DNA of 64,000 nt from IMG/VR virus record IMGVR_UViG_3300010403_000705, positions 368,845 through 432,844 of that record; one strand, written 5' to 3'. The notes beneath the pieces were generated by a model. It had not been told where the DNA came from. It did no database searches and saw only the letters and a list, made by a program, of their open reading frames with translations. Position 1 is the first letter of the stretch, and every line of letters begins with the position of its first letter. This document shows, piece by piece, positions 24,626 to 47,472 of this stretch. A program made the translations under genes and the position numbers.

Positions 24626-24645
24626 ATCTGATATAATTCAATATT

Positions 24646-25548
24646 ATGAGTATGAAGAATAAATTAAAAACTGCTTTTAGCTGGTTTGGTGGAAAATCTA
24701 AAGTGGCAAAAGTTGTTTGGTTAGGTTTAGGTGAAGTTTCTAATTATGTAGAACCCTTTGCTGGTTCTTTAGCAGTATTATTATCGAACCCTAATATTCC
24801 TAAAATTGAAACAGTTAATGATTTAGATTGTGGATTATCTAATTTTTGGAGAGCTATTTCTTATGATGCAGAGGCAGTAGCAAAATATGCGGATTATCCA
24901 GTAAATGAATCTGATTTACATGCTCGTCATAAATGGTTAACTTCTGTTATAACAGACGACTTTAGAAATAAGATGGATTCAGATCCAGACTTTTTTGATG
25001 CCAAAGTTGCTGGATATTGGGTTTGGGGACAGTGTGCTAGTGTAGGTAATAATTGGTTGCAAAATAAAGGTCTAAAAGCTTTGCCTATGTTATCTTCGGC
25101 AGGAGGAGGCATTCACGGTTTAACTTATGATATAAAAGAAGATTTCAAAAAATTACAAAATAGACTAAGAAGAGTTAGAGTAGCATGTGGTGATTGGTCC
25201 AGAATAATTACTCCAGGAATTACTTATGCCAGCAAAGGCTTAGGTAATAATGATATTACTGGGGTATTTCTGGATCCACCATACGATGTCAATGTAAGAG
25301 ATAAAGTGTACAAAGAAGATAATGATGTTTTTACACAAGTTTGTAAGTGGGCAATAGAGAATGGAGATAATCATCGTATGAGAATCGCTTTGTGTGGATA
25401 TGAAGGAAATCATAACATCCCAGATACCTGGCAAACATATGCTTGGAAGACCGGTGGCGGTCTATCTAGTCTTGGAAATGATAGAGGTAAAGACAATGCA
25501 CTTAAAGAACGCATCTATTTTTCTCCTCATTGCTTAAAAATAATATGA
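24646..25548 (+). CDS. DNA adenine methyltransferase (D12 class), copy 2
   Basis: WFGGKS, YVEPFAGS, FLDPPY; paralog of 20856..21755. Confidence 0.88.
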   Translation: MSMKNKLKTAFSWFGGKSKVAKVVWLGLGEVSNYVEPFAGSLAVLLSNPNIPKIETVNDLDCGLSNFWRAISYDAEAVAKYADYPVNESDLHARHKWLTSVITDDFRNKMDSDPDFFDAKVAGYWVWGQCASVGNNWLQNKGLKALPMLSSAGGGIHGLTYDIKEDFKKLQNRLRRVRVACGDWSRIITPGITYASKGLGNNDITGVFLDPPYDVNVRDKVYKEDNDVFTQVCKWAIENGDNHRMRIALCGYEGNHNIPDTWQTYAWKTGGGLSSLGNDRGKDNALKERIYFSPHCLKII

Positions 25549-25670
25549 TATTTATTTTTACTAGTGATTTTTGTTTAACAACTTTATAAAAAAATTAATT
25601 ACAATCAATAATTGTATTAGTCGAAGTAGTATTATTTACTTCACTTTTACTTAATATTAAAGATATTAAA

Positions 25671-25895
25671 ATGAATTTAAGACAAATATTATGTTACTTA
25701 GATACTTGGGGCAAACATATAGAATCATCAAGATGGTTTGATCAAACTGATTCTAGATATAGATGTATTTTCTTAAAGAAAGGTGGGGATCATTATTGCA
25801 CCAACTGTGGTTATTATTTGTATACTGAATATAATTTTCCAGAATCATTAAAAAAGATGCGTGAGATGTATAAAATGTGGTGGGAAATTAAATAA
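25671..25895 (+). CDS. Hypothetical protein
   Basis: 74 aa, CTNCG. Confidence 0.55.
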   Translation: MNLRQILCYLDTWGKHIESSRWFDQTDSRYRCIFLKKGGDHYCTNCGYYLYTEYNFPESLKKMREMYKMWWEIK

Positions 25896-26155
25896 TGATA
25901 ATTAAAAGTGTACCATCAAGTGTTTATCCAGAAGGAGTTACTAAAAAATATTTAATATTTGAAAAAGAAAAAGATGAACATGTTTGTTCAGTAGAGTTTG
26001 TTGATAAATTAGTTTGGATAAAATTTATAGGTTATGGAATAGAGTTTGCACGTATAAAAAATAATAAATTAGTTTGGACAACTAAGCATGATTTTATCAA
26101 AGAAAAGTATAAAAAAATGATAGATAAGTTAATTAGTTTGCACATTTTTTCTTAA
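25895..26155 (+). CDS. Hypothetical protein with C-terminal F-x motif
   Basis: Ends DKLISLHIFS*. Confidence 0.6.
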   Translation: MIIKSVPSSVYPEGVTKKYLIFEKEKDEHVCSVEFVDKLVWIKFIGYGIEFARIKNNKLVWTTKHDFIKEKYKKMIDKLISLHIFS

Positions 26156-26291
26156 TAAAATGGCAAAATTATGGTTTTTAAAGTTTAAAAAAGATAATCG
26201 ATGTTAAAAAAATAACTAGGACTAAGTTATATCATTATCATTAATTATCTGTTTATCGTTGAAATTTTTGTTCAAATATAAGGAATGTATT

Positions 26292-27851
26292 ATGTCTTCA
26301 AAAAAGTTATTTTCTAATAAGTCTGTGGATGTTAAGTTAGTTAAACCAACTGATACAGTAAATAATGCTGGTGGTCAAGCCTATTCTTTAGATGATAAGG
26401 CAGCCTTGGCTCAATTAGCCATGACGGGATGTTTCAATGGTACTTATTATGTTTCTGATGAAGATCAATTAAAAAAAGTATTAGATTTAGCAAATAAATT
26501 GCCAGCAAAATATGTTGCACAACTAGCTGTTTATTCTCGTCAATATGGTTTAATGAAAGATATGCCAGCAGTTTTGGCAGCGGTAGTGGCAGGTAAGGAT
26601 TCAGATCTTTTATCAAAAATTTTTGATAAGGTAGTAGATTCCCCCAAAATGTTAAGAAATTTTGTACAAATTCTTCGTTCAGGAGTAGTAGGTCGCAAAT
26701 CTTTAGGCACTAGACCTAAGAAATTGGTTCAAAAATACCTTGAATCTTTAACTGACGAACAATTATTTATGGCTGATGTTGGAAACGACCCATCTTTACA
26801 AGATGTAATTAAATTGGTTCATCCTAAACCAACTACCAAACAACGTTCTGCTATGTTTGCATATCTCTTAAATAAAGAATATTCCCAGGATGATTTATCT
26901 TTATTAGTAAGACAATTTGAGGACTTTAAAAAGGACATGTCCAAGGACATTCCTAATGTACCTTTTCAAAAATTAACTGCTTTACCACTTACTTCTGATC
27001 ATTGGAAAAAAATTGCTTCAAATGCCACTTGGAATCAAATCAGACAAAATCTTAATACATTCGCTCGTCATAATGTCTTAAGTGATCAGGCATTATTGAA
27101 TCTTATATGTTCTAGAATAGAGGATAAGGAATTAGTTAAAAGAGCTAGAGTATTTCCTTATCAGCTTTTTACCACGTTTCAAAATTTGGAATCAAGTATA
27201 CCAACTAAGATCTCAGTTGCTTTACAAAAAGCTGCTGAACATGCATTGGAAAATATTCCAGAATTTAAAGGTAAAGTCTATGTTATGGTAGATACTTCTG
27301 GTTCTATGAGTTCGCCAGTGACTGGTAAACGTGGTACAGCTACTACAAAAATGTCTTGCATTGATGTTGCTGCTTTAGTGGCGGCAGCTATAATGAGAAA
27401 AAATTCTGATGTAGAAGTATTACCTTTTGATACTAAAGTTCATACACATAAACTGAATCCACTTGATTCGATTATGACTAATGCAAAGATTTTATCTGCT
27501 TTTGGTGGAGGAGGTACGAATTGTTCTCTTCCATTACAAGAATTGAATCGTAGAAAAGCCATGGGAGATTTAGTTATTTATGTAAGTGATAATGAATCTT
27601 GGGTTGATTCTAGCAGAGGAAAGGGGACTGCAACTATGAATGCTTGGGAAGTTTTTAAAGCTCGTAATAGAAATGCAAAATTAGTTTGTATTGATTTGAC
27701 ACCCAATACTTCTACACAAGTTTATTCTAAAAAAGACGTTCTTAACATCGGAGGTTTCTCAGATTCTGTATTTGAAGTGATAAATAAGTTCATGGAGTAC
27801 GGAAATGACGCAAATCTATGGATTAGAACAATTGAGCAGATTAAACTTTAA
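26292..27851 (+). CDS. Ro60/Rsr TROVE-vWA RNA-binding protein
   Basis: NNAGGQAY, LAQLAMTGCFNGTYY, ARVFPYQL, VDTSGSM MIDAS, GGGGTNCS, SDNESW, IGGFSD. Confidence 0.92.
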   Translation: MSSKKLFSNKSVDVKLVKPTDTVNNAGGQAYSLDDKAALAQLAMTGCFNGTYYVSDEDQLKKVLDLANKLPAKYVAQLAVYSRQYGLMKDMPAVLAAVVAGKDSDLLSKIFDKVVDSPKMLRNFVQILRSGVVGRKSLGTRPKKLVQKYLESLTDEQLFMADVGNDPSLQDVIKLVHPKPTTKQRSAMFAYLLNKEYSQDDLSLLVRQFEDFKKDMSKDIPNVPFQKLTALPLTSDHWKKIASNATWNQIRQNLNTFARHNVLSDQALLNLICSRIEDKELVKRARVFPYQLFTTFQNLESSIPTKISVALQKAAEHALENIPEFKGKVYVMVDTSGSMSSPVTGKRGTATTKMSCIDVAALVAAAIMRKNSDVEVLPFDTKVHTHKLNPLDSIMTNAKILSAFGGGGTNCSLPLQELNRRKAMGDLVIYVSDNESWVDSSRGKGTATMNAWEVFKARNRNAKLVCIDLTPNTSTQVYSKKDVLNIGGFSDSVFEVINKFMEYGNDANLWIRTIEQIKL

Positions 27852-27899
27852 TCTGCCATCAAGATTTAAGCATAACTATGCTAAGAAAGATCTTTTATT

Positions 27900-28127
27900 A
27901 TGAAAATAGAAATTGACACAGAAACTTTTGATTTTTCTTATCAAAATGAAGAATTTATTAAAGCCAGTACTCATTATTGGAAGTTACTTAAAGGTGAGGA
28001 TGATGGTTTGAATGGTGAAGAATTATTAAAAGCTTCAGAAAAAGAGCAGGCGTTAAACGAATTTCGTATGAGAGCTTTTAAGTTTTATTGTTTAAATATT
28101 AAAAGTAAATTATGTTTGCAAAAGTAA
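27900..28127 (+). CDS. Hypothetical protein
   Basis: 75 aa ORF. Confidence 0.55.
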   Translation: MKIEIDTETFDFSYQNEEFIKASTHYWKLLKGEDDGLNGEELLKASEKEQALNEFRMRAFKFYCLNIKSKLCLQK

Positions 28128-28417
28128 AAGAATTTTTTATAAATAATAATATAGATATTAATAATAAAGTTAAAGAATTTACTAATGAATATAGGTTTGC
28201 TGTTTTTGGACCCAGAGATTCTGTAGTATATTATCGTATTTGGGGCACAGAAGATACGCCTATTGTGGATGCCTGGTTTGGTAAACATAATAGTGAGAGT
28301 GGTGGATTGAGCTTACAATCAAGTGCTAATAATGAAAATCAATTATATTATATGTTTAAATTGCATAAACGTTTTATGCAATCGGGTCGTAAAAAAATTT
28401 TACGTAATTGGAAATAA
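28112..28417 (+). CDS. Hypothetical protein
   Basis: 101 aa ORF. Confidence 0.6.
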   Translation: MFAKVKEFFINNNIDINNKVKEFTNEYRFAVFGPRDSVVYYRIWGTEDTPIVDAWFGKHNSESGGLSLQSSANNENQLYYMFKLHKRFMQSGRKKILRNWK

Positions 28418-28419
28418 AA

Positions 28420-28821
28420 ATGGGTCATTATTGTTCTATTAAATTTACTAGTAATTTGTCTGAGCTAGGTGCAGAAATTATTGAATATTTACAGAATCAT
28501 TCTTTACTAGAAGCTAGTCAAACATTTACCTATTATCCTTTTATAGAAGCCTGTTATAATAGATATCAATGGGCGGTAATTCCCATTACAATTTTCGATA
28601 AGAACAACAAAATATGGAAAGTTGATTGGGAACATAAAATTAAATTTTATGAGAGACCTTTAAAGTTTCTTATTCCTTATTTAACTACAAAAGAAACAAA
28701 TTTTATATATTCTTCTGAACATAGTGATTGGGTGGAGTTTTCTATTACTTTATGCCCAAAAACTCCTATAATACAATGGGATCGTAAATTTGGAGATCCA
28801 ACTGGAATAGAAATTTATTAA
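28420..28821 (+). CDS. Hypothetical protein
   Basis: ORF starting MGHYCS. Confidence 0.6.
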   Translation: MGHYCSIKFTSNLSELGAEIIEYLQNHSLLEASQTFTYYPFIEACYNRYQWAVIPITIFDKNNKIWKVDWEHKIKFYERPLKFLIPYLTTKETNFIYSSEHSDWVEFSITLCPKTPIIQWDRKFGDPTGIEIY

Positions 28822-28835
28822 AAGGATTTTTAAAA

Positions 28836-29318
28836 ATGGCAAATCATGGATTTTTGATATTTAAAAGTAATATAAAATTAAATGAAATATCTAAAATTTT
28901 ACAAGAAATAAATGAAAATAGATTTAAAAATAAGTTAATTATTACTTTTCATGAAGGTGACCAATCATGGTTTATTGAATATCAGTCACCCACAAGACTT
29001 GGATGTCCAGGATTTAGAATTTGGAAGAGATCACCTCGTAAATTAGAATTTCGTCATCCTTATGGAAAGTGGATGCCATATGTGATGACAGTTTTTATTG
29101 AGACACTTTCATTTAAAATGAATTCTATCATTTCTGATGAGGGAACAAATAATAAATGGATAGGAGACCCAAATAATTATTGTTCTTTTAAGCAATGGTC
29201 TGGAGACTTTTATCCAAAAAATTGTGATTATATATCTATTGTAGATAAAATTTTTTCTATAAATTCATTTATAGAATCTGATTTAGAAGATGCACCAGAA
29301 GAATTGAGAGACTGTTAA
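28836..29318 (+). CDS. Hypothetical protein
   Basis: 160 aa ORF. Confidence 0.65.
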   Translation: MANHGFLIFKSNIKLNEISKILQEINENRFKNKLIITFHEGDQSWFIEYQSPTRLGCPGFRIWKRSPRKLEFRHPYGKWMPYVMTVFIETLSFKMNSIISDEGTNNKWIGDPNNYCSFKQWSGDFYPKNCDYISIVDKIFSINSFIESDLEDAPEELRDC

Positions 29319-29319
29319 A

Positions 29320-30150
29320 ATGATAAAAAGAGATGGTGTTAAGTTAATGAATGCAAGAACTAATAACGTTTCTATTGCCAAAGAAACGCTGGCTATTTTG
29401 AAACAAAAATATTATAATTCTCCCAATGGTAACAAAATAAATATTTCTGAAGCATTGGATGCCGCTGTTAAAGGATCTGTTCTTTATCAAAATGAAATAA
29501 GTTTTGTTGAAAATGAGTCGGTAAAATTACCATTAATAGAAGTTACTCCTGAAACAACTGCTCAAGCAGCACAACGATTATTATGTATACATAAAGATGT
29601 AGTAGTTTTAAATTTTGCTTCTGCTAGAAATCCAGGCGGTGGATTTTTATCTGGTGCTATAGCACAAGAAGAAGATTTATGTCGCTGTTCTGGATTATAT
29701 TCTTGTCTTAAATCTAAGCCAATTTTTTATAATGAAAATATATTATGTGATAATACATATTATACAGATAATATTATTTACTCACCAAATGTTCCATTTT
29801 TTAGAAGCGAACATTTTTTATTTTTAGAAAATCCATTTTGTGTTTCTGTTATAACTGCTCCAGCACCTAATATTAGAGGTATGAATAATATCGATGAAAA
29901 ACAATTATTTGATGTATTGAGTAATAGAATATCTAAAATATTAAAAATTGCTGCATATCATAATCATAAAAATATTATTTTGGGCGCATTTGGATGTGGA
30001 GCATTTGGTAATGATCCATTAATGGTTGCACATATTTTTTTAAATTCTTTGAAAATGTTTAATTATTTTGGAAATGTATGTTTTGCTATTTATTCTAATA
30101 AAGGAGATTTAACTAATTTAAATGCATTTAAAAAAATATTTGATAAATGA
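29320..30150 (+). CDS. TIGR02452 family microbial-type PARG / macrodomain
   Basis: LNFASARNPGGGFLSGAIAQEEDLCRCS, LGAFGCGAFGNDP. Confidence 0.88.
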   Translation: MIKRDGVKLMNARTNNVSIAKETLAILKQKYYNSPNGNKINISEALDAAVKGSVLYQNEISFVENESVKLPLIEVTPETTAQAAQRLLCIHKDVVVLNFASARNPGGGFLSGAIAQEEDLCRCSGLYSCLKSKPIFYNENILCDNTYYTDNIIYSPNVPFFRSEHFLFLENPFCVSVITAPAPNIRGMNNIDEKQLFDVLSNRISKILKIAAYHNHKNIILGAFGCGAFGNDPLMVAHIFLNSLKMFNYFGNVCFAIYSNKGDLTNLNAFKKIFDK

Positions 30151-30787: not shown

Positions 30788-30894
30788 AATATGCAGGGAA
30801 TTTTTGAACATATTTGTATTCATTAATATAAAAAATTCATAAAAATAGAATAAAATTCGATAACATAATCGCACAGATATTCATACTAATATAT

Positions 30895-31173: not shown

Positions 31174-31177
31174 TTTT

Positions 31178-31339: not shown

Positions 31340-31348
31340 GAAAAGCTT

Positions 31349-32316: not shown

Positions 32317-32392
32317 GTCTCTGTAGTCTAACGGATAGGGCAACTGCCTTCTAAGCAGTGCGGTGCAAGTTCGAATCTTGCCAGAGGCACCA
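32317..32392 (+). tRNA. tRNA-Arg(TCT)
   Basis: Cloverleaf, loop CTTCTAA, CCA. Confidence 0.93.
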
Positions 32393-32481
32393 ATCTTCAA
32401 TTATCCTGAAGAGATTAATAGAAGGATTAATTAGCAAACCATATTAACTTATGTTTAGGCTAGTAATTGCGGACAGTACAT

Positions 32482-32558
32482 GGAGGAGTAGCTCAGTGAA
32501 AGAGCACGATGCTATAAACATAACGAGGTCCTTGGTTCAAGTCCAAGCTCTTCCACCA
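32482..32558 (+). ncRNA. tRNA-like RNA, bulged anticodon stem (nominal anticodon ATA)
   Basis: Intact acceptor, D and T arms and CCA; anticodon arm CGATG-CTATAAA-CAT-AA-CG. Confidence 0.65.
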
Positions 32559-32573
32559 ATGATCTACAACAAA

Positions 32574-32680
32574 GGCATCCAGGGACACTGAACCCGCTTC
32601 GCAGGTGGGCAGTGCCACCCTCTCTGACAGAGGGGAACGTCACCAGTAACTAGACGTGACACGTTGGAGAGAAAATGTGA
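32574..32680 (+). ncRNA. GC-rich four-hairpin structured RNA
   Basis: CACTG..CCCGC/GTGGG..CAGTG; CCCTCT/AGAGGG; ACGTC/GACGT; CACGTT/AATGTG. Confidence 0.55.
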
Positions 32681-32738
32681 ATGTTAGACCCAAATCACTA
32701 CACATAATAAAATATGCATAAATTGATATATAAATATT

Positions 32739-32812
32739 GGGCTTGTAATTAAATGGGATAATAATTCGTTTGCACCGAATTTTTGAGAGTTCGATTCTCT
32801 CCGGGTCCACCA
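32739..32812 (+). tRNA. tRNA-Ala(TGC)
   Basis: G3:U70, loop TTTGCAC, CCA. Confidence 0.88.
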
Positions 32813-32833
32813 GAATTTAAGGTAAATTTCATT

Positions 32834-33034
32834 ATGAATGTGAAAGATTTGAAGAAAAAGTTAGATGGATTACCCGATAATCTTGAAGTAAAAATTGCTT
32901 ATGGTTGCCAGCTTTTTGAAACGGCAGGTAGTAAAGGTCATACTTTAGACGAGATTCAAGATGTAGTGATAGTGCACCATAACGATTGTATTGATGAAGT
33001 TTGGTTATATAATGAATATGCGTCTGAGGTTTAA
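32834..33034 (+). CDS. Hypothetical phage protein
   Basis: MNVKDLKKKLDGLPDNLEV, a common small phage family. Confidence 0.65.
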   Translation: MNVKDLKKKLDGLPDNLEVKIAYGCQLFETAGSKGHTLDEIQDVVIVHHNDCIDEVWLYNEYASEV

Positions 33035-33221
33035 GTTTTTAAAAATATGAATAAAACAGAACAGTCAGAATTATTAAAAATAAAAGAGTTTTTGGAATCT
33101 CTGTTAGAATCATTATCTAGAAAAGAATTGTTGTACTTTAAAGATAGATTTGAAAAATTAATGATTGAGAATAGTTATTCTGGTTTGTTAGATTCATTTA
33201 ACAAAGATACAAAAAAGTAAT

Positions 33222-33300
33222 GGTGATCGTAGTGTACTGGTTTTGTGCATGACTGACTGTGACTCAGTAGGTGCGGGTTCAAATCCCGTCGATCACCCCA
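33222..33300 (+). tRNA. tRNA-His(GTG)
   Basis: G-1:C73, loop CTGTGAC, CCA. Confidence 0.92.
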
Positions 33301-33324
33301 ATTAGCAATAGTACAGGTAAATTT

Positions 33325-33398
33325 GCCTCGTTCGTCTAATGGTAGGACAAAGCCCTTTCAAGGCTTGAACAGGAGATCGATACTCCTACGAGGTACCA
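33325..33398 (+). tRNA. tRNA-Glu(TTC)
   Basis: Loop CTTTCAA, T-loop ATCGATA, CCA. Confidence 0.9.
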
Positions 33399-33405
33399 AG
33401 TATAT

Positions 33406-33480
33406 TGTGGAGTAGAGCATCGGTAGCTTGCTTGGCTCATAACCAAGAGGTAGGAAGTTCAATTCTTCCCTCCGCAACCA
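33406..33480 (+). tRNA. tRNA-Met(CAT), initiator-like D arm
   Basis: Loop CTCATAA, CCA. Confidence 0.88.
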
Positions 33481-33500
33481 ATAGAAAGACAAACCGTAAA

Positions 33501-33725
33501 ATGAGAAAAACTGGTGTTATAGTATATTCAAATTCTTCAAAAGAAACCGTGGATTACTATTGTGAGGCTCTGAAAAAACATTTTGCAATGCCTCTGTATT
33601 TCGAAATTGAAATGATTAATAATCAATATTCAATTTTGTTTGATCCTTGGGACGGATATCTTGTAAATACTAGTGGATATGTTGATGAAATTAAAAAGTA
33701 TGTGACTAAAATACAAAAAGAATAA
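33501..33725 (+). CDS. Hypothetical protein
   Basis: Start moved to the ATG after the tRNA. Confidence 0.55.
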   Translation: MRKTGVIVYSNSSKETVDYYCEALKKHFAMPLYFEIEMINNQYSILFDPWDGYLVNTSGYVDEIKKYVTKIQKE

Positions 33726-33787
33726 TATGATGACTGTGGACAAAGTTATTATGAGGAACCATTATATGGTTGTGGTGGTTATTAAAA

Positions 33788-33952
33788 ATGTGTGATATTT
33801 GTAATGATGATTCTTTAAATGAAAGCTTCGTTGAAGAACAGAATTTTAAATTCTGGCAACGTTTGAAAAATAAATTAAGCGAAGAAGATTTAGAAAAGAT
33901 GTATCCTAATAAGAATAATGTTGTCATTAAACGTAATGATGATTATCAATAA
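33788..33952 (+). CDS. Small hypothetical protein
   Basis: MCDICN... Confidence 0.4.
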   Translation: MCDICNDDSLNESFVEEQNFKFWQRLKNKLSEEDLEKMYPNKNNVVIKRNDDYQ

Positions 33953-33953
33953 T

Positions 33954-34027
33954 TGGAATATCGTCCAACGGCAGGACAACGGGCTTTGAACCCGTGAATC
34001 TAGGTTCGAATCCTAGTATTCCAGCCA
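33954..34027 (+). tRNA. tRNA-Gln(TTG)
   Basis: U1-A72, loop CTTTGAA, G73, CCA. Confidence 0.93.
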
Positions 34028-34030
34028 ACT

Positions 34031-34246
34031 ATGAGTAGGCTTAAAAGGATAAATATGTCAATAAAAAATGCTGATGAATTGATTGATTTATTTAAAAATA
34101 AATTAAATAAACCATCATTGAAGAAAGACGTACAAATTCTTAAAGAAAGCATAAAGATTATATATGAAGATAAAAATTCAAACAATGAAATTAAAGAGAA
34201 AGCATTGTTAAGTCTACAATATTTACAAGAAAAAACAGAGAACTAA
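34031..34246 (+). CDS. Hypothetical protein
   Basis: 71 aa between RNA genes. Confidence 0.5.
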   Translation: MSRLKRINMSIKNADELIDLFKNKLNKPSLKKDVQILKESIKIIYEDKNSNNEIKEKALLSLQYLQEKTEN

Positions 34247-34255
34247 TTGTTCTTA

Positions 34256-34364
34256 AGCAAGAATAGTTTAATGGTAGAACGCTGGAGTCCATCCAGAAGC
34301 GGTACAAAAAGAATCCACGTGCACTGGGTAAAAAAATTCTTAGGTTCAAATCCTCCTTCTTGCT
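34256..34364 (+). ncRNA. tRNA-shell RNA with enlarged variable region
   Basis: AGCAAGAA/TTCTTGCT, D arm TAGTTTAATGGTAGAAC, CTGGA-GTCCA-TCCAG, ~45-nt insert, AGGTTCAAATCCT. Confidence 0.6.
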
Positions 34365-34365
34365 C

Positions 34366-34435
34366 TATGACGAATGCTAAAATGGGATTACATTTAATTT
34401 ACAAAAACATATCTCATTTAATTTTTGTCGTCATA
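34366..34435 (+). ncRNA. Hairpin RNA, Y-RNA candidate
   Basis: TATGACGA/TCGTCATA and AAATGGGAT/ATCTCATTT stems; 5' strand contains GACGAATG. Confidence 0.35.
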
Positions 34436-34441
34436 ATATTT

Positions 34442-34548
34442 GGGTACGTACCTCAAATATGGATGAGGATCGGAGCGGGGGCGAATTGGTAAAATATTAG
34501 CTAGTCCCGAGCACTCTAAAGTTGTTGGTTCAAATTCAATCGTATCCA
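34442..34548 (+). ncRNA. tRNA-shell RNA with extended bulged anticodon-position stem and G3:U70
   Basis: GGGTACG/CGTATCC-A, CCTC/GAGG D stem, GTTGG-TTCAAAT-TCAAT T arm; ~55-nt central domain. Confidence 0.65.
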
Positions 34549-34669
34549 CTTAGATTTTATGTTCCCTGAAAAAGTATACCCGTTAGTTTGGGCGGAGAAC
34601 ACTATAGCTGAATGCAGATAGGTTTACATCGGAAAAAAATAGACTTATCAAATTTTGTCAGCTTAATAT

Positions 34670-34744
34670 AGAGTAATAGTTTAATGTAAAGAATAGCCTC
34701 ATTAACAGAGGAAGATTTTGGTTTAAATCCAAATTACTCTACCA
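34670..34744 (+). ncRNA. Atypical tRNA (nominal anticodon TAA, short variable loop)
   Basis: AGAGTAA/TTACTCT-ACCA, loop ATTAACA, T-loop TTTAAAT. Confidence 0.6.
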
Positions 34745-34752
34745 CCTATAAT

Positions 34753-34838
34753 GCCGACGTTGAGCAGGTGGTGGGCTCAGTGCGCTGTAAACGCATATCC
34801 TTAAGGACTTGGAGGTTCGATTCCTCTCGGCGGCACCA
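34753..34838 (+). tRNA. tRNA-Tyr(GTA)
   Basis: Loop CTGTAAA, variable arm, CCA. Confidence 0.88.
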
Positions 34839-34964
34839 AGATAAAATTATTTTTATTTGGGGTATAATTAGGTATAACTATAACAAGTTGTAAGAACAAT
34901 ATTTAACTCACTACCGCAATTAAATATTGTACAGACTAAATCTAGCGGTGTTATTAGAGGTTTT

Positions 34965-35393
34965 ATGATAAAGATCAAGAAACTTGAAAAAATAGAAACC
35001 AATCAAATGGGTGATAATTATCTTGACCATTTAGTAACTGTTGATATAGATAGTATTACACATAGAGTTTGGGTAAGTTGTAGTGGTTCTCTAATGCGTA
35101 CCGAGAAGAAATCTTTAAAAGATGTAAGTAAGTTTATCAATGATAAATTAGAAAAGTCATTATATAATGATATCAGTTTTGAACATTGGTTAGGAAATCA
35201 AGGAGATTATGCTGCTCCGTATGTTGTGTTAAAAGCAGGCAATGTTGATAAGGTAGTAGATGATGAGTGTTTTTATCATGAATACCCACGTTTGATATTC
35301 ACTACTCCACCACCTCCTCCAGCAGAACCAAAACAGAAACCAACGAATACTATTAATGACGAAATTAAAAAATCAATTATTAATGTAACTTAA
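34965..35393 (+). CDS. Hypothetical protein with polyproline tract
   Basis: 142 aa; SD GAGG; TPPPPPAEP. Confidence 0.65.
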   Translation: MIKIKKLEKIETNQMGDNYLDHLVTVDIDSITHRVWVSCSGSLMRTEKKSLKDVSKFINDKLEKSLYNDISFEHWLGNQGDYAAPYVVLKAGNVDKVVDDECFYHEYPRLIFTTPPPPPAEPKQKPTNTINDEIKKSIINVT

Positions 35394-35399
35394 TGAAAA

Positions 35400-35428
35400 A
35401 AGTATGGTAGATTTTATCTACCATACTT
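35400..35428. terminator. Inverted repeat / terminator or processing stem
   Basis: AAGTATGGTAGA/TCTACCATACTT. Confidence 0.55.
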
Positions 35429-35435
35429 AATAAAA

Positions 35436-35508
35436 CGGGAATAAAGTGTAGCCTGGTTGCACACGTCGTTTGGGGCGATGTAGGGTGGTTCAAATCCAAT
35501 ATTCCCGA
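35436..35508 (+). tRNA. tRNA-Pro(TGG), 8/4-like
   Basis: CGGGAATA/TATTCCCG, loop TTTGGGG. Confidence 0.8.
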
Positions 35509-35509
35509 C

Positions 35510-35591
35510 TAGATAAAATATGGTGCGGTGACGCCTGTAAATAATTTCTAAAGAAAATTATTTATCCGTTGCAACTACGGTATTTTATCTA
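35510..35591 (+). ncRNA. Cloverleaf-like RNA
   Basis: 11-bp closing stem TAGATAAAATA/TATTTTATCTA enclosing three hairpins, the last CCGT-TGCAACT-ACGG (T-like). Confidence 0.5.
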
Positions 35592-35602
35592 AAAATTATT
35601 AT

Positions 35603-35705
35603 GCACATCTAAAAAGTCTCCAGCAGAACCCCAGGAGGCACGAATCTAAGGAGTAGTGGCAGTCGAATTAACGATAGATACGTTTGAACTTAGAATGTGT
35701 TGTGC
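35603..35705 (+). ncRNA. Multi-branch structured RNA
   Basis: GCACATCTAA/TTAGAATGTGT closing stem, GTCTCC/GGAGGC, ATCTA/TAGAT. Confidence 0.4.
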
Positions 35706-35717
35706 TTAATGATATTT

Positions 35718-35793
35718 CGGGAATGAGGTGTAACTTGGTTGCATGGGAGCTCTGGAAGCTTTTGGAGGCGTTCGAATCGCACATTCCCGACCA
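35718..35793 (+). tRNA. tRNA-Pro(TGG), C33/A37, 8/4-like
   Basis: CGGGAATG/CATTCCCG-ACCA, loop TCTGGAA. Confidence 0.75.
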
Positions 35794-35900
35794 GTAGAGA
35801 GATCGTATTAGCAGATAAAACTTTAGTACGAGTTAAAGGAATTAGTAATATATCTTAAATGATAAATGTTTGGCGGTGCAAGACCCGCCTCTCTACTCCA
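35794..35900 (+). ncRNA. tRNA-shell RNA ending in CCA
   Basis: GTAGAGA/TCTCTAC-TCCA, T-like GGCGG-TGCAAGAC-CCGCC, internal TCGTATTA/TAGTACGA hairpin. Confidence 0.6.
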
Positions 35901-35946
35901 AAACCTAAATTAAAAATCAACACAAACTCATAACAAGGAGCTTATA

Positions 35947-36204
35947 ATGTCAATTGTACTATGGATTCTATTTGGACTTGTAGTTGGTGTTATCGCTAAA
36001 TTATTGACTCCTGGTCGTGAACCTAGTGGATTTGTTTTAACTACTCTATTAGGTATTGGTGGTTCGTTATTGGGAGGATTTCTAGGAAAATTGATTGGTA
36101 TATATCCAACGTACCAATCAACGGGTGGATTTTTTATGGCTATTTTAGGAGCTGTCGTTATACTAGCGATATATAACTCTTTTCTATTTCGTAGAACTTT
36201 TTAA
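35947..36204 (+). CDS. GlsB/YeaQ/YmgE (transglycosylase-associated) membrane protein
   Basis: WILFGLVVGVIAKLLTPG...LGIGGSLLGG...AILGAVVIL. Confidence 0.88.
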   Translation: MSIVLWILFGLVVGVIAKLLTPGREPSGFVLTTLLGIGGSLLGGFLGKLIGIYPTYQSTGGFFMAILGAVVILAIYNSFLFRRTF

Positions 36205-36227
36205 TAAAAAAAGTATTTAAAAATCTT

Positions 36228-36300
36228 CAGAATATGTGGTCTAAGGGCAGGGCAGGTGGAAGTGTTCATCACGTTCAGGTTCGATTCCTGACATATTCTG
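36228..36300 (+). ncRNA. tRNA-like RNA with shrunken anticodon loop
   Basis: CAGAATATG/CATATTCTG, TCAGG-TTCGATT-CCTGA; loop of 4-6 nt; no CCA. Confidence 0.6.
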
Positions 36301-36306
36301 TTTTAT

Positions 36307-36382
36307 CGGGAAATGTTGTAATCTGGTAGCATCCGTGCTCAGGAAGCATGTAGTATGAGTTCAAATCTCGTTTTCCCGACCA
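36307..36382 (+). tRNA. tRNA-Pro(AGG), C33/A37
   Basis: CGGGAAA/TTTCCCG-ACCA, loop TCAGGAA. Confidence 0.8.
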
Positions 36383-36385
36383 TAT

Positions 36386-36494
36386 TGTAATTAAGTGTAA
36401 TGGTGCATCATCTCGATAATGATACGTACGTTCAATTCGTACACTTCCAGTCGGATATAGTAGAGAGAAAAAGGTTCGATTCCTTTAATTACAA
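36386..36494 (+). ncRNA. tRNA-shell RNA with a nested second T-arm
   Basis: TGTAATT/AATTACA, D arm, TCTC/GAGA enclosing GTACG-TTCAATT-CGTAC, outer AAAGG-TTCGATT-CCTTT. Confidence 0.65.
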
Positions 36495-36502
36495 TATACT
36501 AT

Positions 36503-36587
36503 GGATCTGTTCTCTAGCGGCAATGAGAAGAGCCTTTTAAGCTCTCGGCGAAAGCCTACGTGGGTTCGAGTCCCTCCAGATCCACCA
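36503..36587 (+). tRNA. tRNA-Lys(TTT) with long variable arm
   Basis: Loop CTTTTAA, variable stem GGC-GAAA-GCC, CCA. Confidence 0.85.
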
Positions 36588-36674
36588 CATCAAAACGATG
36601 TAGTAAGAAAATGAATATAGATTACGATTTTCTAGATATTATGATGTTACAATATTTGAATAGAGAGATAACAA

Positions 36675-36914
36675 ATGAAGTCAAGGTATATAAATAATTC
36701 TGCAATGAATAGTGCTGAATTTGGAAAATTCATGCAAAGTGAAGAAACTAAAGCCGCCATAGAAGAAGGATATAATATTATTAATATTAAAGGTTATACA
36801 AAAGGCAGTGGATCGGAAGTTTGTTATTGTGTTTCTATGAAAAAACCTTTTTTTAAATTTATTTGTGACGAGATAAATTCTACTATAAGACTATGGTTTA
36901 TGTTAGATAAATAA
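36675..36914 (+). CDS. Hypothetical protein
   Basis: 79 aa ORF. Confidence 0.55.
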   Translation: MKSRYINNSAMNSAEFGKFMQSEETKAAIEEGYNIINIKGYTKGSGSEVCYCVSMKKPFFKFICDEINSTIRLWFMLDK

Positions 36915-36920
36915 TTTTAT

Positions 36921-36995
36921 TCCTACCTAGCTCAATGGTAGAGCGTTCGGCTGTTAACCGAATGGTTCCAGGTTCGAGTCCTGGGGTAGGAGCCA
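36921..36995 (+). tRNA. tRNA-Asn(GTT)
   Basis: Canonical cloverleaf, G73, CCA. Confidence 0.95.
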
Positions 36996-37003
36996 ATAAA
37001 TAG

Positions 37004-37096
37004 CATGGAGGATACCAGCAGCGAGAGCAGCTTACCTTAAGTGGCAACTGGATAAAATCTTCCCAAAGTAGTTTGCTCAAACTACATAGATCCATG
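37004..37096 (+). ncRNA. Structured RNA between tRNAs
   Basis: CATGGA/TCCATG, CCAG/CTGG, GTAGTTT-GCTC-AAACTAC. Confidence 0.4.
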
Positions 37097-37125
37097 ATAT
37101 AACATGGTTATACTATTTATTCTAT

Positions 37126-37201
37126 GGTACGTTAGCTGGCTTGGTGCAGCGCCCGCCTGTTAAGCGGATGACGGAGGGTTCAATTCCCTCACGTATCGCC
37201 A
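37126..37201 (+). tRNA. tRNA-Asn(GTT), second type
   Basis: Loop CTGTTAA, G73, CCA. Confidence 0.88.
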
Positions 37202-37251
37202 TCATGATTTGTGAATAAAATATATTCATATAATGATATATAATTAGAAAT

Positions 37252-37326
37252 AGCTTCATCGTTCAATGGTTAGGACACTGGCTTGTCACGTCAGTAATGA
37301 GGGTTCGATTCCCTTTGGAGCTGCCA
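37252..37326 (+). tRNA. tRNA-Asp(GTC)
   Basis: Loop TTGTCAC, CCA. Confidence 0.92.
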
Positions 37327-37421
37327 ATAAACATAATTAGGTATGTAGTAATTTTATAATGTTTATTCCCAGAACTTATCACTAGTCAAGGCAAAGTATA
37401 GTAATAATAATTCATTACAAT

Positions 37422-37739
37422 ATGAATATTTCTCAATTATGCAAATTAGCAGACAAGTTTGAAGAAAAAATTAAATTAGCTACTGCTAGTAATAGTTGCT
37501 CACGTTGTAATGATATTCATTGTTGTATGAATTTTGGTAATTCTCATAGTCTAGATCAAGATAATAATGAGGCAAAATGTGAGGGTTACAAAAAATCTCC
37601 TGTAGGATCTCCGAGACAAAGATCTTTTTGTGCAAGACATTGTGCTATGAAAAAACAAAGAACTTCTATAGAAGTTGCAAATGATCCAGAATCTTGTATT
37701 AATAAAGGTTTAAGGCGTTGGAAATGCCGTTGTGGTTGA
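37422..37739 (+). CDS. DUF6321-like Cys-rich phage protein
   Basis: RQRSFCAR...DPESCINKGLRRWKC. Confidence 0.6.
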   Translation: MNISQLCKLADKFEEKIKLATASNSCSRCNDIHCCMNFGNSHSLDQDNNEAKCEGYKKSPVGSPRQRSFCARHCAMKKQRTSIEVANDPESCINKGLRRWKCRCG

Positions 37740-37769
37740 TATAAAACAACTACATAAATAGTGATATAT

Positions 37770-37845
37770 AGGTGTGTAGCAATTCGGCAATTGCACTTGC
37801 TTGTCAAGCAAGACCAAGCGGGATCGACACCCGTCATGCCTGCCA
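37770..37845 (+). tRNA. tRNA-Asp(GTC), second type
   Basis: Loop TTGTCAA, T-loop ATCGACA, CCA. Confidence 0.85.
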
Positions 37846-37848
37846 TAT

Positions 37849-37924
37849 AGTCCATTAGCTCAGGGGTTAGAGCGCCTGTCTTATAAACAGGAAGTCGTTG
37901 GTTCAATTCCAACATGGACTACCA
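37849..37924 (+). tRNA. tRNA-Ile(TAT)
   Basis: Loop CTTATAA, CCA. Confidence 0.9.
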
Positions 37925-38100
37925 TATTATACTAAAAACGCAAGATTGCGATACTATAAAATTGGAGTGTCAATCATGAAAAAAGTCATCAATAACTTGA
38001 TGTGTTCGCTATGCTATCTGCTACCATTACACAATACAAAATATTGTGTTTGTCCATGTCATTGGGATTAAATATTAGTACATAATAATATTTCATACAT

Positions 38101-38322
38101 ATGAAAAAAATGCAAGATTGTGATTTTGTCGTAGGTTTTAATAATAAAGGAATCTATGTTTTAAAAGATAGAAATTCATTTTCAGATGAAATTGCTATAA
38201 CATTTCAAGAATTTTTTCATAGATTATCTGATTATTCTTTATATTTAGAGCCAATAAAGATATTCGAGCCTCTAATACAATTTATGTATAAAAAAATTAT
38301 CTCGTTGAAATGTTTTTTATAA
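38101..38322 (+). CDS. Hypothetical protein with C-terminal F-x motif
   Basis: Ends KKIISLKCFL*. Confidence 0.6.
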   Translation: MKKMQDCDFVVGFNNKGIYVLKDRNSFSDEIAITFQEFFHRLSDYSLYLEPIKIFEPLIQFMYKKIISLKCFL

Positions 38323-38330
38323 AATAAAAT

Positions 38331-38579
38331 GCGATTGTGGTGAAAGAGGAAAACACACCATCAAAAATGTTAAAAGAAGATGGCATATTAAAAATGGCAT
38401 CATAGTATTTTTTAATATAAGCTTTATAAGGTGATGCCTAGGAAAGATATATTTATAAAATATGTAACGGGTTTGCGGAAGCACCGGACAGGGTTTTGAC
38501 AAGTTCTGTAGGGAAGCGCGTTTGCCTAATAGTTATAGTGTGATGTTATATACGGGTTCAAATCCCGTCAATCGCACCA
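38331..38579 (+). ncRNA. 249-nt tRNA-shell RNA with pseudoknotted insert
   Basis: GCGATTG/CAATCGC-ACCA, D arm, ACGGG-TTCAAAT-CCCGT; ~190-nt structured insert. Confidence 0.75.
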
Positions 38580-38715
38580 TTTTGCAAATTTAGGATATAT
38601 GATGCATTATAATATAATAAATGCTCATAATGAAATTGTGCATATTAAGAGATATAAAGTAAGAAGAAGTATGATAGAGAAATTGGTATAAGTAGAATAC
38701 AATAATTTAAGTTAT

Positions 38716-38792
38716 CGTCCTTTAGCTCATTTGGTTAGAGCGCCGTTCTGATAAGGCGGAGGTGCTGGGATCGTAGCCCAGGAGGACGACCA
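38716..38792 (+). tRNA. tRNA-Ile(GAT)
   Basis: Loop CTGATAA, T-loop ATCGTAG, CCA. Confidence 0.9.
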
Positions 38793-38805
38793 ATTAGAAA
38801 ATAAC

Positions 38806-38881
38806 GGCACTGTCGTATTTGTGGTCAAGACTCGGGTCTGAAAAGCCCAGAAAAGCGGATCGTTACCGCTCGGTGCCGCCA
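38806..38881 (+). tRNA. tRNA-Phe(GAA), divergent
   Basis: Loop CTGAAAA, T-loop ATCGTTA, G73, CCA. Confidence 0.8.
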
Positions 38882-38884
38882 TTA

Positions 38885-38961
38885 GGGTTTGTAACTCAAT
38901 TGGAAGCAGTAGCTGGCTCTTAACCAGTGTTGTGAGAGTTCGAGTCTCTCCAGACCCACCA
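38885..38961 (+). tRNA. tRNA-Lys(CTT)
   Basis: Loop CTCTTAA, CCA. Confidence 0.9.
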
Positions 38962-47070: not shown

Positions 47071-47438
47071 ATATAGTTGGTTAAGATAATCGCTGCCAAT
47101 TTTAATTGGGAGAGGAAGTTCCGAACACCAATAAAGCAGAGTGCCAGTTAACGGCTGGGTGCAGTGATGCAACTGAAAGTGTAACAGAAAATAAACCGCC
47201 TGTAAAGGTAAGGGTGAAATGGTGAAAAATGGCGAACTAAGAGTGCGCCATGTGTAAGAGACCACCGCATATTTGGTAACAAATATGGCAATACAAACCA
47301 CACTCGGTGCAAGACAAATAGAAAACGTTTGAGAATCGCTTATTCGATGTTTTCGGGTTGTTGCTTGATCCAAATAGTGATATTTGGACTAGATTAATGA
47401 TTATCCTAGACAGAATTCGGGCTACTTATTAACTATAT
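47071..47438 (+). ncRNA. rnpB: RNase P RNA (bacterial type A-like)
   Basis: GAGGAAGTTCCG(AAC), GAAAGTGTAACAGAAA, AGGGTGAAA, GTGCAAGAC, ACAGAATTCGGGCTA; P1 ATATAGTTGGT/ATTAACTATAT. Confidence 0.92.
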
Positions 47439-47472
47439 TTCTTTTATAAAAGTTATCTAAAACATCAATACC

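What the first reader, a model, noticed from the sequence alone, without database searches (positions are those of the whole stretch)
26292..27851. Phage Ro60 without an adjacent canonical Y RNA, inside an RNA-repair-rich genome
Seen: a complete TROVE-vWA gene with no YrlA-type permuted tRNA-like RNA recognised next to it. The window also has a PNKP-like phosphoesterase, an RNA-repair HAD, an RNA ligase-like enzyme, CYTH, two R2K ATP-grasps and TrmH. Established: bacterial Ro60 binds tRNA-mimicking Y RNAs and is linked to RNA repair operons. Inference: its partners are among the odd RNAs of the tRNA array.
Basis: partly seen in the sequence, partly recalled or inferred. Interest (0 to 1): 0.6.

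Follow-up and report, generated by a model that had tools for sequence, protein, structure and literature searches.

The report
Phage Ro60 with tRNA-array Y RNAs
The Ro60 gene of this giant soil phage is real, and its apparently missing partner RNAs are probably two small hairpin Y RNAs sitting between tRNA genes 6.5 kb downstream, where the standard RNA library does not detect them.

Summary
The ORF at 26292-27851 is a complete Ro60 (TROVE plus vWA with a MIDAS motif). It lies in a 432.8-kb soil huge-phage record.

Y RNAs are nevertheless present. Two hairpins, at 34366-34436 and 34604-34666, lie on the same strand inside the tRNA array. They carry the Ro60-binding stem of YrlA: P1 containing the GNCGAAUG motif, an asymmetric internal loop, and P2 ending in GGAUUAC. 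They lack the tRNA-like domain.

- **Structure:** 12 of 16 pairs show compensatory changes across 19 sequences.
- **Own genome:** a covariance model of the stem gives only these two strong hits in the whole genome.
- **Link to Ro60:** the model gives 166 hits, all on the Ro60 strand, in 61 of 80 phage Ro60 loci.
- **Link to YrlA:** the longer hits coincide end to end with sub-threshold full-length Rfam YrlA matches.

In this phage clade the Y RNAs start 3-10 kb downstream of Ro60, often directly abutting tRNA genes. This suggests they are released by tRNA-processing enzymes. Ro60 binding is inferred, not tested.

A separate permuted tRNA-like RNA 131 kb upstream lacks this stem and remains unexplained.

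The parts
26292..27851 (+). Ro60 (Rsr-like) gene: TROVE HEAT-repeat ring plus vWA domain with a MIDAS motif
   Evidence: Pfam vWA_Ro60 6e-18 and TROVE 6e-6. Full-length alignment to 2NVO, 9KOP, 9NEN and 1YVP. At least 120 homologs at 66-81% identity.
34366..34436 (+). Y-a, a hairpin-type Y RNA. P1 is UAUGACGA/UCGUCAUA and contains GACGAAUG. The internal loop is AUGCUA / AAUUUUUG. P2 is AAAUGGGAU/AUCUCAUUU, followed by a UACAU-initiated 22-nt loop.
   Evidence: CM R1 (relatives' YrlA-like RNA) gives its best genome hit here, matching the outer stem only. CM R2 gives 77.3 bits, but this sequence was in the training set. The MFE fold equals the covariation structure, z -3.99. It is 82% identical to G001 at the syntenic place.
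34604..34666 (+). Y-b, a second hairpin-type Y RNA. P1 is AGCUGA/UCAGCU with GCUGAAUG. P2 is GAUAGGU/ACUUAUC, followed by UUACAU and an A-rich loop.
   Evidence: CM R2 gives 53.7 bits, E 8e-10, and this sequence was not in the training set. MFE z -3.10. Conserved in G001.
34257..34364 (+). Odd 108-nt tRNA-like gene (Gly-UCC-like, with a ~43-nt insertion in the variable region). Its 3' end abuts Y-a; no CCA is encoded.
   Evidence: Rfam tRNA 38.7 bits. Not called by ARAGORN. Sequence read.
34670..34741 (+). tRNA gene that begins 3 nt after Y-b. Its RNase P site would define the 3' end of Y-b.
   Evidence: Rfam tRNA 44.9 bits.
32317..38961 (+). tRNA array that hosts Y-a and Y-b: 20 ARAGORN calls, two further Rfam-only tRNAs, and several unscored tRNA-like elements.
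47073..47440 (+). Phage-encoded bacterial class A RNase P RNA, a candidate enzyme for cutting the tRNA-Y-tRNA precursor (inferred role).
   Evidence: Rfam RF00010, 247.5 bits, full length. Present in 3 of 5 related huge-phage records.

Best explanation
The phage encodes a normal Ro60, and its Y RNAs are displaced rather than absent. Two ~65-70-nt hairpin RNAs lie in the tRNA array, 6.5 and 6.75 kb downstream of Ro60 on the same strand.

They carry the stem module that YrlA RNAs use to bind Ro60. This module consists of a terminal helix containing the GNCGAAUG motif, an asymmetric internal loop, and a second helix ending in GGAUUAC (the conserved UA 'kink' motif). The tRNA-like effector domain is replaced by a simple A-rich loop. 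In this they resemble the hairpin Y RNAs YrlB and Yrn2 of bacteria.

In related huge phages the same stem carries nothing, a T-arm, or a full T-arm / closed acceptor / D-arm domain. The family is therefore modular.

Inferred steps:
- The array is transcribed as a polycistronic precursor.
- RNase Z-type cleavage at the 3' end of the upstream tRNA, and RNase P cleavage at the 5' end of the downstream tRNA, release the Y RNAs.
- The Y RNAs bind the outer face of the Ro60 ring. There they gate its cavity or tether it to a nuclease such as host PNPase, within a phage programme of tRNA supply and RNA repair.
For: Shown:
1. The CM built from the relatives' array-borne YrlA-like RNA has its best hit in the whole genome at window 34355-34451. 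It matches only the outer stems.
2. A 19-sequence alignment of the hairpins supports two helices. 93.8% of cells are paired and 12 of 16 pairs have compensatory changes. The covariation score is 0.592 against 0.208 in shuffles (0/500) and at most 0.144 when slid.
3. CM R2 over 437 kb of this genome, both strands, gives two strong hits only, Y-a and Y-b. Y-b was not in the training set (53.7 bits, E 8e-10).
4. R2 over 80 phage Ro60 loci (1.51 Mb, both strands) gives 166 hits at E<=0.01. All are on the Ro60 strand, in 61 of 80 loci.
5. The long R2 hits coincide to within 1 nt with full-length Rfam YrlA matches of 49-61 bits: L164 8981-9117, L139 11907-12043, L139 12188-12317 and L116 4328-4459. 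They also coincide with T/AS/D modules. The modelled stem is therefore the YrlA stem.
6. Control from a collection-wide motif scan: of 80 listed motif-bearing loci, 15 are R2-positive, and 10 of those lie on contigs with Ro60. None of the 65 R2-negative loci holds Ro60.
7. Of 37 full-length hairpins, 15 have a tRNA ending within 15 nt upstream (14 of them within -2 to +2 nt) and 15 have a tRNA starting within 15 nt downstream. The window shows the same abutment.
8. In all 21 other loci found for the window's own Ro60 clade (63-81% identity), no locus has a hit closer than about 3 kb; 19 of the 21 have hits, lying +3 to +10 kb downstream.
9. The conserved GNCGAAN0-1G and UA motifs are those described for YrlA (PMC4201824; bioRxiv 10.1101/312249).
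Against: - No RNA data exist. The only run holding this DNA is a soil DNA metagenome. Expression, RNA ends and Ro60 binding are therefore all inferred.
- Y-b has GCUGAAUG (U for the motif's C), and the first G of the motif is not conserved across the family.
- The loops are A-rich, not the small pyrimidine-rich loops described for YrlB and Yrn2.
- Rfam's YrlA model gives no match to either hairpin.
- Nearly all genes and tRNAs in these loci share the Ro60 strand (624 of 625 tRNAs). Strand concordance alone is therefore weak evidence.
- One complete 67-kb phage record has an R2 hit but no Ro60 detected with the clade profile.
Confidence: 0.75

Rival explanations
1. The true, or an additional, partner is the permuted tRNA-like RNA at genome 263,876 (about 263.8-264.0 kb). 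It lies 131 kb upstream of Ro60 on the same strand, inside a GC-rich island. It would be a YrlA-type tRNA mimic encoded far from its protein.
For: It is the best Rfam YrlA match in the genome: 28.3 bits, E 9.5e-5, model positions 29-81, with T-arm, short closed hairpin and D-arm in the YrlA order. It is the only hit of my structural T/AS/D scan in 866 kb of both strands. In IMG/VR that arrangement sits beside Ro60 in 18 of 51 loci. The fold has a long closing stem (about 30 bp in the MFE fold), z -3.5. A GGAUUAC motif lies upstream.
Against: The stem model R2 finds nothing there even with filters off (best 2.4 bits). Genuine phage YrlAs give full-length Rfam matches of 49-61 bits, whereas this RNA gives only a local core match. 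It has no homolog in 80 Ro60 loci or in the closest complete relative G001. It has an extra anticodon-like hairpin, and its ends lie in the variable-arm position, which is not the YrlA topology. T/AS/D RNAs with other stems occur on phage contigs without a nearby Ro60.
Confidence: 0.2
2. The hairpins are tRNA-array punctuation, such as processing signals, spacers or attenuators. They would co-occur with Ro60 only because Ro60 sits near tRNA arrays in these phages.
For: They abut tRNA genes. In the window's clade they occur only inside arrays.
Against: The other tRNA clusters of this same genome (20-23 kb, 55-61 kb and scattered) have no hit. In more distant clades the hairpins and YrlAs sit directly beside Ro60, for example five in a row 70-700 nt after Ro60 in L139. 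The stem is the same as in RNAs that Rfam aligns full length to YrlA. The conserved single-stranded motifs match the published Ro60 contact motif. No R2-negative control locus holds Ro60.
Confidence: 0.1
3. The phage Ro60 has no dedicated phage RNA. It would use host Y RNAs or act directly on misfolded RNAs.
For: Ro60 also binds misfolded RNAs in its cavity (established for Xenopus and Deinococcus Ro60). No canonical YrlA is adjacent.
Against: It leaves unexplained a covarying, Ro60-linked RNA family with the Ro60-contact motif in 61 of 80 loci.
Confidence: 0.05

Closest known systems
YrlA (Rfam RF02553; Chen et al. 2014, PMC4201824)
   Same: The stem is formed by the 5' and 3' ends, with the GNCGAAN0-1G motif on the 5' strand and the conserved UA (YUAY) motif at the top of the stem. 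The RNAs are encoded on the Ro60 strand. Relatives carry the full T/AS/D domain on the same stem.
   Different: Y-a and Y-b have no T-arm, acceptor-like hairpin or D-arm. They lie 6.5 kb from Ro60 rather than within 4 kb. They are embedded between tRNA genes. Rfam's model gives no match to them.
Hairpin-type bacterial Y RNAs: S. Typhimurium YrlB, M. smegmatis YrlB and D. radiodurans Yrn2 (PMC4201824)
   Same: They are second, shorter Y RNAs that fold into one long hairpin bearing the Ro60 motif. In M. smegmatis they are processed from a common precursor with other RNAs.
   Different: The described loops are small and pyrimidine-rich, whereas here they are 13-22 nt and A-rich. No sequence homology was tested, because no YrlB or Yrn2 sequence was available to the tools.
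Thermus phage phiLo Ro60 with Yrl1/Yrl2 (PMC12135203)
   Same: A phage Ro60 with two phage-encoded Y-like RNAs that contain a CGAA motif. That paper reports binding to host PNPase and attenuation of its activity.
   Different: The phiLo Yrls lie immediately upstream of the Ro60 gene, not in a tRNA array. The protein shows only distant sequence similarity to this one (phmmer E 2e-13).
Metazoan Y RNAs
   Same: A terminal stem binds Ro60 mainly through its 5' strand (GGUCCGA-like motif), and a variable loop acts as the effector module.
   Different: Metazoan Y RNAs are Pol III transcripts of individual genes with no tRNA-array context.

Membership tests
Ro60 / TROVE protein | TROVE (HEAT-repeat ring) domain followed by the Ro60-type vWA domain | tested here: met
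   Pfam PF05731 6e-6 and PF25045 6e-18, both above their cut-offs. Precomputed Pfam on homologs agrees.
Ro60 / TROVE protein | MIDAS motif DxSxS in the vWA domain | tested here: met
   DTSGS aligns with DVSGS of D. radiodurans Rsr. It is invariant in 40 homologs.
Ro60 / TROVE protein | Ring fold and RNA binding | not tested
   No structure was predicted. There is a full-length sequence alignment to four solved Ro60 proteins.
YrlA (RF02553) | Score at or above Rfam's gathering threshold (69 bits) | tested here: not met
   There is no match to Y-a or Y-b even at E<=10. Note that phage YrlAs next to Ro60 also fall below the threshold, at 49-61 bits.
YrlA (RF02553) | Terminal stem with GNCGAAN0-1G on the 5' strand | tested here: met
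   Y-a has GACGAAUG. Y-b has GCUGAAUG, one deviation. The helices are supported by covariation.
YrlA (RF02553) | Conserved UA / YUAY at the top of the stem | tested here: met
   Y-a has GGAUUACAU and Y-b has GGUUUACAU. UACAU is invariant in 19 sequences.
YrlA (RF02553) | tRNA-like domain: T-arm, closed acceptor-like hairpin, D-arm | tested here: not met
   The loops are 22 and 13 nt with no such arms. The structural scan finds none in the window.
YrlA (RF02553) | Encoded within 4 kb of Ro60 on the same strand | tested here: not met
   The strand is the same, but the distances are 6,515 and 6,753 nt. In this clade all hits found start 3-10 kb downstream.
Hairpin-type Y RNA (YrlB / Yrn2 class) | Single long hairpin carrying the Ro60 motif | tested here: met
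   The two-helix hairpin is the MFE structure and is supported by covariation.
Hairpin-type Y RNA (YrlB / Yrn2 class) | Small pyrimidine-rich loop | tested here: not met
   The loops are A-rich and 13-22 nt long.
Any Y RNA | Physical association with Ro60, and Ro60-dependent accumulation | not testable with these tools
   No isolate and no RNA run are available.

The most novel reading that the evidence does not exclude
Huge phages carry a modular Y-RNA superfamily. One Ro60-binding stem bears nothing, a T-arm, or a whole permuted tRNA. Up to five or more copies per genome are interleaved with tRNA genes. They would be matured by tRNA-processing enzymes, including the phage's own RNase P RNA. 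Together with Ro60 they would form a phage-run surveillance or anti-defence hub for tRNAs. Current RNA libraries miss nearly all of these RNAs.
Probability: 0.4. Interest if true: 0.7.

Novelty: new variant of a known kind. Interest (0 to 1): 0.55.

Why it matters
Phage Ro60 and phage YrlA RNAs are already known, so the gene itself is ordinary. What is new lies in three points.

- **Annotation.** In a large clade of 360-510-kb phages the Y RNAs are not next to Ro60. They sit kilobases away inside tRNA arrays, often as stem-only hairpins. Adjacency-based and Rfam-based annotation therefore reports 'Ro60 without Y RNA'. The covariance model built here recovers 166 candidates in 80 loci.
- **Modularity.** The family forms a natural series running from stem only, through stem plus T-arm, to stem plus full tRNA mimic. 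This series could be used to dissect what the tRNA-like effector domain adds.
- **Maturation.** The direct abutment to tRNA genes gives a concrete, testable route through RNase P and RNase Z. It also links Ro60 to the phage's tRNA-supply and RNA-repair programme.

Tried and rejected
- **Rfam over the genome.** I ran gathering thresholds on the window and on 273 kb of the rest of the genome. I did not scan genome 138-237 kb with all of Rfam. The YrlA model alone was run genome-wide through the genome search, and R1 and R2 covered everything.
- **Phage collection.** Megablast of 24000-30000 against GenBank phages found nothing.
- **Weak YrlA hits in relatives.** The hits at G001 396,880 and 426,501 overlap tandem tRNAs and were rejected as dimeric-tRNA artefacts.
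- **The 263.8-kb RNA.** I first took it for the missing YrlA. I demoted it after it failed the stem model and showed no conservation.
- **Assembly chimera.** I suspected the GC-rich segment at 248-280 kb was a chimera. I rejected this because relative G001 has a syntenic GC-rich island and shares flanking genes.
- **Stop-codon recoding.** I tested whether recoding explains the low coding density there. It does not.
- **First alignment.** A MAFFT alignment of 16 canonical phage YrlAs (A1) was too ragged in the flanks to model, and I did not use it for a CM.
- **Relatives' tRNA-like Y RNAs.** nhmmer and blastn searches with the relatives' family 1 RNA found no copy in this genome. Family 2 was searched only against the Ro60 loci. 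For this genome I rely on the Rfam YrlA search and my T/AS/D scan, which found only the 263.8-kb RNA.
- **Motif scan.** The 15-base motif scan of IMG/VR returned mostly chance matches: 65 of the 80 listed loci are R2-negative.
- **Expression.** Only one DNA run holds the sequence. Its Logan contig of 84.5 kb covers 28701-34700 without a difference. It is probably the source sample and so is not independent.
- **Literature.** The supplement of Chen et al. 2014 and two reviews were not held.
- **Unused tools and other matters.** I did not use the large representative protein search, structure prediction or complex prediction.

Full report
**1. What is at the coordinates**

The window is the last 64 kb of a 432,844-bp IMG/VR virus record (CheckV 97% complete). 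The record has about 30% GC, and the only sequencing run holding it is a soil metagenome.

The ORF at 26292-27851 (+) starts at an ATG preceded by AAGGAA. It encodes 519 aa with Pfam TROVE and vWA_Ro60 domains. It aligns over its full length to solved Ro60 proteins from Deinococcus, Thermus phage phiLo, human and Xenopus, with the MIDAS DxSxS motif in place.

It belongs to a large clade. At least 120 proteins at 66-81% identity exist, many on contigs of 360-511 kb. Its N-terminus matches their consensus. The gene is real and intact.

**2. The claimed absence**

Rfam 15 finds no Y_RNA or YrlA in the window, either at gathering score or at E<=10 over 20000-56000. The intergenic stretches next to the gene are short and AT-rich.

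- HAD_SAK_2, a SpoU methylase, an RNA ligase, CYTH and two R2K ATP-grasps;
- in addition two aminoacyl-tRNA synthetases, EF-G, PARG and an ADP-ribosylglycohydrolase.

The observation therefore stands as written.

**3. A YrlA-like core elsewhere**

Run genome-wide, Rfam's YrlA model has one notable match at genome 263,874-263,924 (+). It scores 28.3 bits (E 9.5e-5) and covers model positions 29-81. The match is a T-arm, a short closed hairpin and a D-arm in the permuted order typical of YrlA. The flanks fold into a long stem (z -3.5).

An IMG/VR scan for this arrangement returned 51 loci. Eighteen of them have Ro60 within 1.7 kb on the same strand. My structural scanner finds this as the only such module in both strands of the genome.

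It lies in a GC-rich island (45-60% GC) with low coding density. I suspected a chimeric assembly. However, the closest complete relative (G001, 446.5 kb, Ro60 81% identical) has a syntenic GC-rich island and shares neighbouring genes.

G001 has no counterpart of this RNA, and neither do 80 Ro60 loci.

**4. What the relatives have**

In G001 and G002 (Ro60 80-81% identical), weak full-length YrlA matches lie 6.4-8.6 kb downstream of Ro60 on the same strand, inside the tRNA array.

These are genuine YrlA-topology RNAs: a closing stem, a V hairpin, a T-arm, a 7-8-bp closed acceptor-like hairpin and a D-arm. Two families of them have homologs in further loci, and the stems covary.

The window has no homolog at the syntenic place. 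Between tRNA-Pro(UGG) and position 36227 it carries 715 nt of unrelated sequence.

**5. The key result**

I built a covariance model from relatives' family 1 (R1). Its best hit in the whole genome is at window 34355-34451, and it matches only the outer stems. The 78 model positions of the tRNA-like core are replaced by 4 nt.

Searching with this element retrieved many similar hairpins from the Ro60 loci, all on the Ro60 strand. An alignment of 19 of them (A5) shows these features in order:
- helix P1, which includes the CGA of a conserved N-C-G-A-A-U-G-C;
- an asymmetric internal loop (AUGC.. on the 5' side, A-AUYUUUG on the 3' side);
- helix P2 ending in GGAUUAC;
- an invariant UACAU opening the loop.

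Pair counts support both helices. 93.8% of cells are paired and 12 of 16 pairs have compensatory changes. The covariation score is 0.592, against 0.208 in shuffles (0 of 500 reach it) and at most 0.144 for slid partners.

I built model R2 from this alignment. Over 437 kb of the phage genome, both strands, it gives two strong hits only:
- Y-a at 34366-34436 (77.3 bits; in the training set);
- Y-b at 34604-34666 (53.7 bits, E 8e-10; not in the training set).

One weak minus-strand hit lies at genome 243,197-243,261 (27.8 bits). Both hairpins fold into the modelled structure as their MFE (z -3.99 and -3.10), and both are conserved in G001.

**6. Why these are Y RNAs**

a. R2 finds 166 hits at E<=0.01 in the 80 Ro60 loci. 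Every hit is on the Ro60 strand, and 61 of 80 loci have at least one.

b. About a third of the hits are 82-163 nt long. These coincide with T/AS/D modules. They also coincide, to within one nucleotide, with full-length Rfam YrlA matches of 49-61 bits: L164 8981-9117, L139 11907-12043, L139 12188-12317 and L116 4328-4459. The modelled stem is thus the YrlA stem, which the literature assigns as the Ro60-binding module.

c. The motifs are the published ones. GNCGAAN0-1G near the 5' end resembles the GGUCCGA contacted by Xenopus Ro60 (PMC4201824). The conserved UA produces the kink at the top of the stem (bioRxiv 10.1101/312249).

d. A collection-wide motif scan served as a control. Of its 80 listed loci, 15 are R2-positive. 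Ten of those lie on Ro60-bearing contigs, four are on incomplete records or fragments, and one is a complete 67-kb record without a detectable Ro60. None of the 65 R2-negative loci holds Ro60.

e. The other tRNA clusters of this genome have no hit.

**7. Placement and likely maturation**

In the window's own clade (Ro60 63-81% identical), the hairpins and their longer relatives start 3-10 kb downstream of Ro60, at or inside the tRNA array. In more distant clades they sit within about 2 kb of Ro60, sometimes as five tandem copies (L139). The window is therefore typical of its clade.

Of 37 full-length hairpins, 15 have an ARAGORN tRNA ending within 15 nt upstream (14 of them at -2 to +2 nt). 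Fifteen have a tRNA starting within 15 nt downstream.

The window shows the same pattern. Y-a begins 2 nt after the tRNA-like gene 34257-34364, which encodes no CCA. Y-b ends 3 nt before the tRNA at 34670-34741.

I infer that the Y RNAs are cut out of a polycistronic tRNA precursor by RNase Z-type and RNase P cleavages. The phage encodes its own class A RNase P RNA at 47073-47440, and so do three of five relatives. This step is inference. Precedent exists in M. smegmatis, where YrlA and YrlB are processed from one precursor and RNase P cuts YrlA (PMC4201824).

**8. Function**

By analogy, the Y RNA stem binds the outer surface of the Ro60 ring and gates its cavity, while the loop recruits an effector. 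In D. radiodurans and Salmonella, Y RNA tethers Rsr to PNPase. In phage phiLo, Ro60-Yrl complexes bind host PNPase and attenuate it (PMC12135203).

This genome has only stem-only forms in the array, whereas relatives also keep T-arm and full tRNA-mimic forms. Its Ro60 may therefore work with a reduced effector set. Alternatively, the 263.8-kb tRNA-like RNA may supply that role. That RNA lacks the stem (best R2 score 2.4 bits with filters off), so I rate this rival at about 0.2.

**9. Comparison with known systems and novelty**

Phage Ro60, phage YrlA and hairpin-type second Y RNAs are all described (PMC4201824, PMC7824862, PMC12135203). I found three things not described in the held literature:
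- Y RNAs embedded in huge-phage tRNA arrays kilobases from Ro60;
- the modular series built on one stem;
- the fact that Rfam's threshold misses even the Ro60-adjacent phage YrlAs.

I file Y-a and Y-b as Y RNAs of the YrlA-stem lineage. They are not members of YrlA proper, because the tRNA-like domain was tested and is absent.

**10. Limits**

There is no RNA evidence and no binding evidence. The Logan contig that confirms the assembly over 28701-34700 probably comes from the source sample. E-values from the home-made models are rough. Strand concordance is partly expected, because nearly all genes in these loci share one strand.

Noticed in passing
window 47073-47440 (+): A full-length bacterial class A RNase P RNA (247.5 bits) is encoded by the phage, directly upstream of an RNA ligase ORF (47473-48141). 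Homologs at 270-288 bits occur in 3 of 5 related huge-phage records. My literature search turned up no paper describing phage-encoded RNase P RNA.
   Followed up: partly
genome C1:263,8xx (L001:1440-1620), outside the window: A permuted tRNA-like RNA: T-arm, short closed acceptor-like hairpin, D-arm and an anticodon-like hairpin, closed by a long stem (about 30 bp in the MFE fold) in the variable-arm position. It is the best Rfam YrlA hit in the genome, but it lacks the Y stem and has no homolog in relatives. Its function is unknown.
   Followed up: partly
genome C1:~248,000-280,000 (L015-L017), outside the window: A GC-rich island (45-60% GC in a 30% GC genome) with low coding density and mostly unannotatable small ORFs. 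It also holds a DEAD helicase and a PNK-like ATPase. A syntenic island of 50-64% GC exists in relative G001 (85-127 kb). The cause is unexplained.
   Followed up: partly
window 14650-14770, 34455-34556, 35719-35793, 36383-36500, 38460-38578; genome 252826, 261014, 316725, 319463, 362620: Orphan T-arms and odd tRNA-like genes missed by ARAGORN and mostly by Rfam, all on the + strand. Several have long inserted hairpins or end in CCA. The element at 34455-34556 lies between the two Y hairpins and has no significant fold (z +0.4).
   Followed up: partly
window 36229-36300 (+): ARAGORN calls a tRNA with a 2-base anticodon. A similar call sits at the syntenic place in G001, so it is a conserved oddity rather than an error.
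   Followed up: no
genome C1:55,645-55,997 and 58,637-58,710, outside the window: A phage-encoded tmRNA (tag ANDNAFVPMAQAA) and a suppressor-type tRNA with anticodon CUA. ORF statistics do not indicate TAG recoding in the genome.
   Followed up: partly
genome C1:243,197-243,261 (-), L015:5597-5661: A weak minus-strand match (27.8 bits) to the Y-stem model, with a GGAUUACAU motif. It may be a degenerate copy.
   Followed up: no
L103:14616-15103: Four Y hairpins in a related phage. The last three are near-identical copies (equal length and score) repeating every 142 nt, apparently alternating with a ~80-nt unit. Other loci also carry 3-5 Y RNAs in a row (L139, L126, L150).
   Followed up: no
L139:2879-2944: A Pistol ribozyme match above Rfam's threshold (42.5 bits) in a related Ro60-bearing phage contig.
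   Followed up: no
window 4975-6534, 9337-10677, 57713-59794, 29320-30150, 53190-54104: A translation and ADP-ribose toolkit: a class II Asp/Lys/Asn-type tRNA synthetase, a Glu/Gln-type tRNA synthetase, EF-G, a microbial PARG and an ADP-ribosylglycohydrolase.
   Followed up: no
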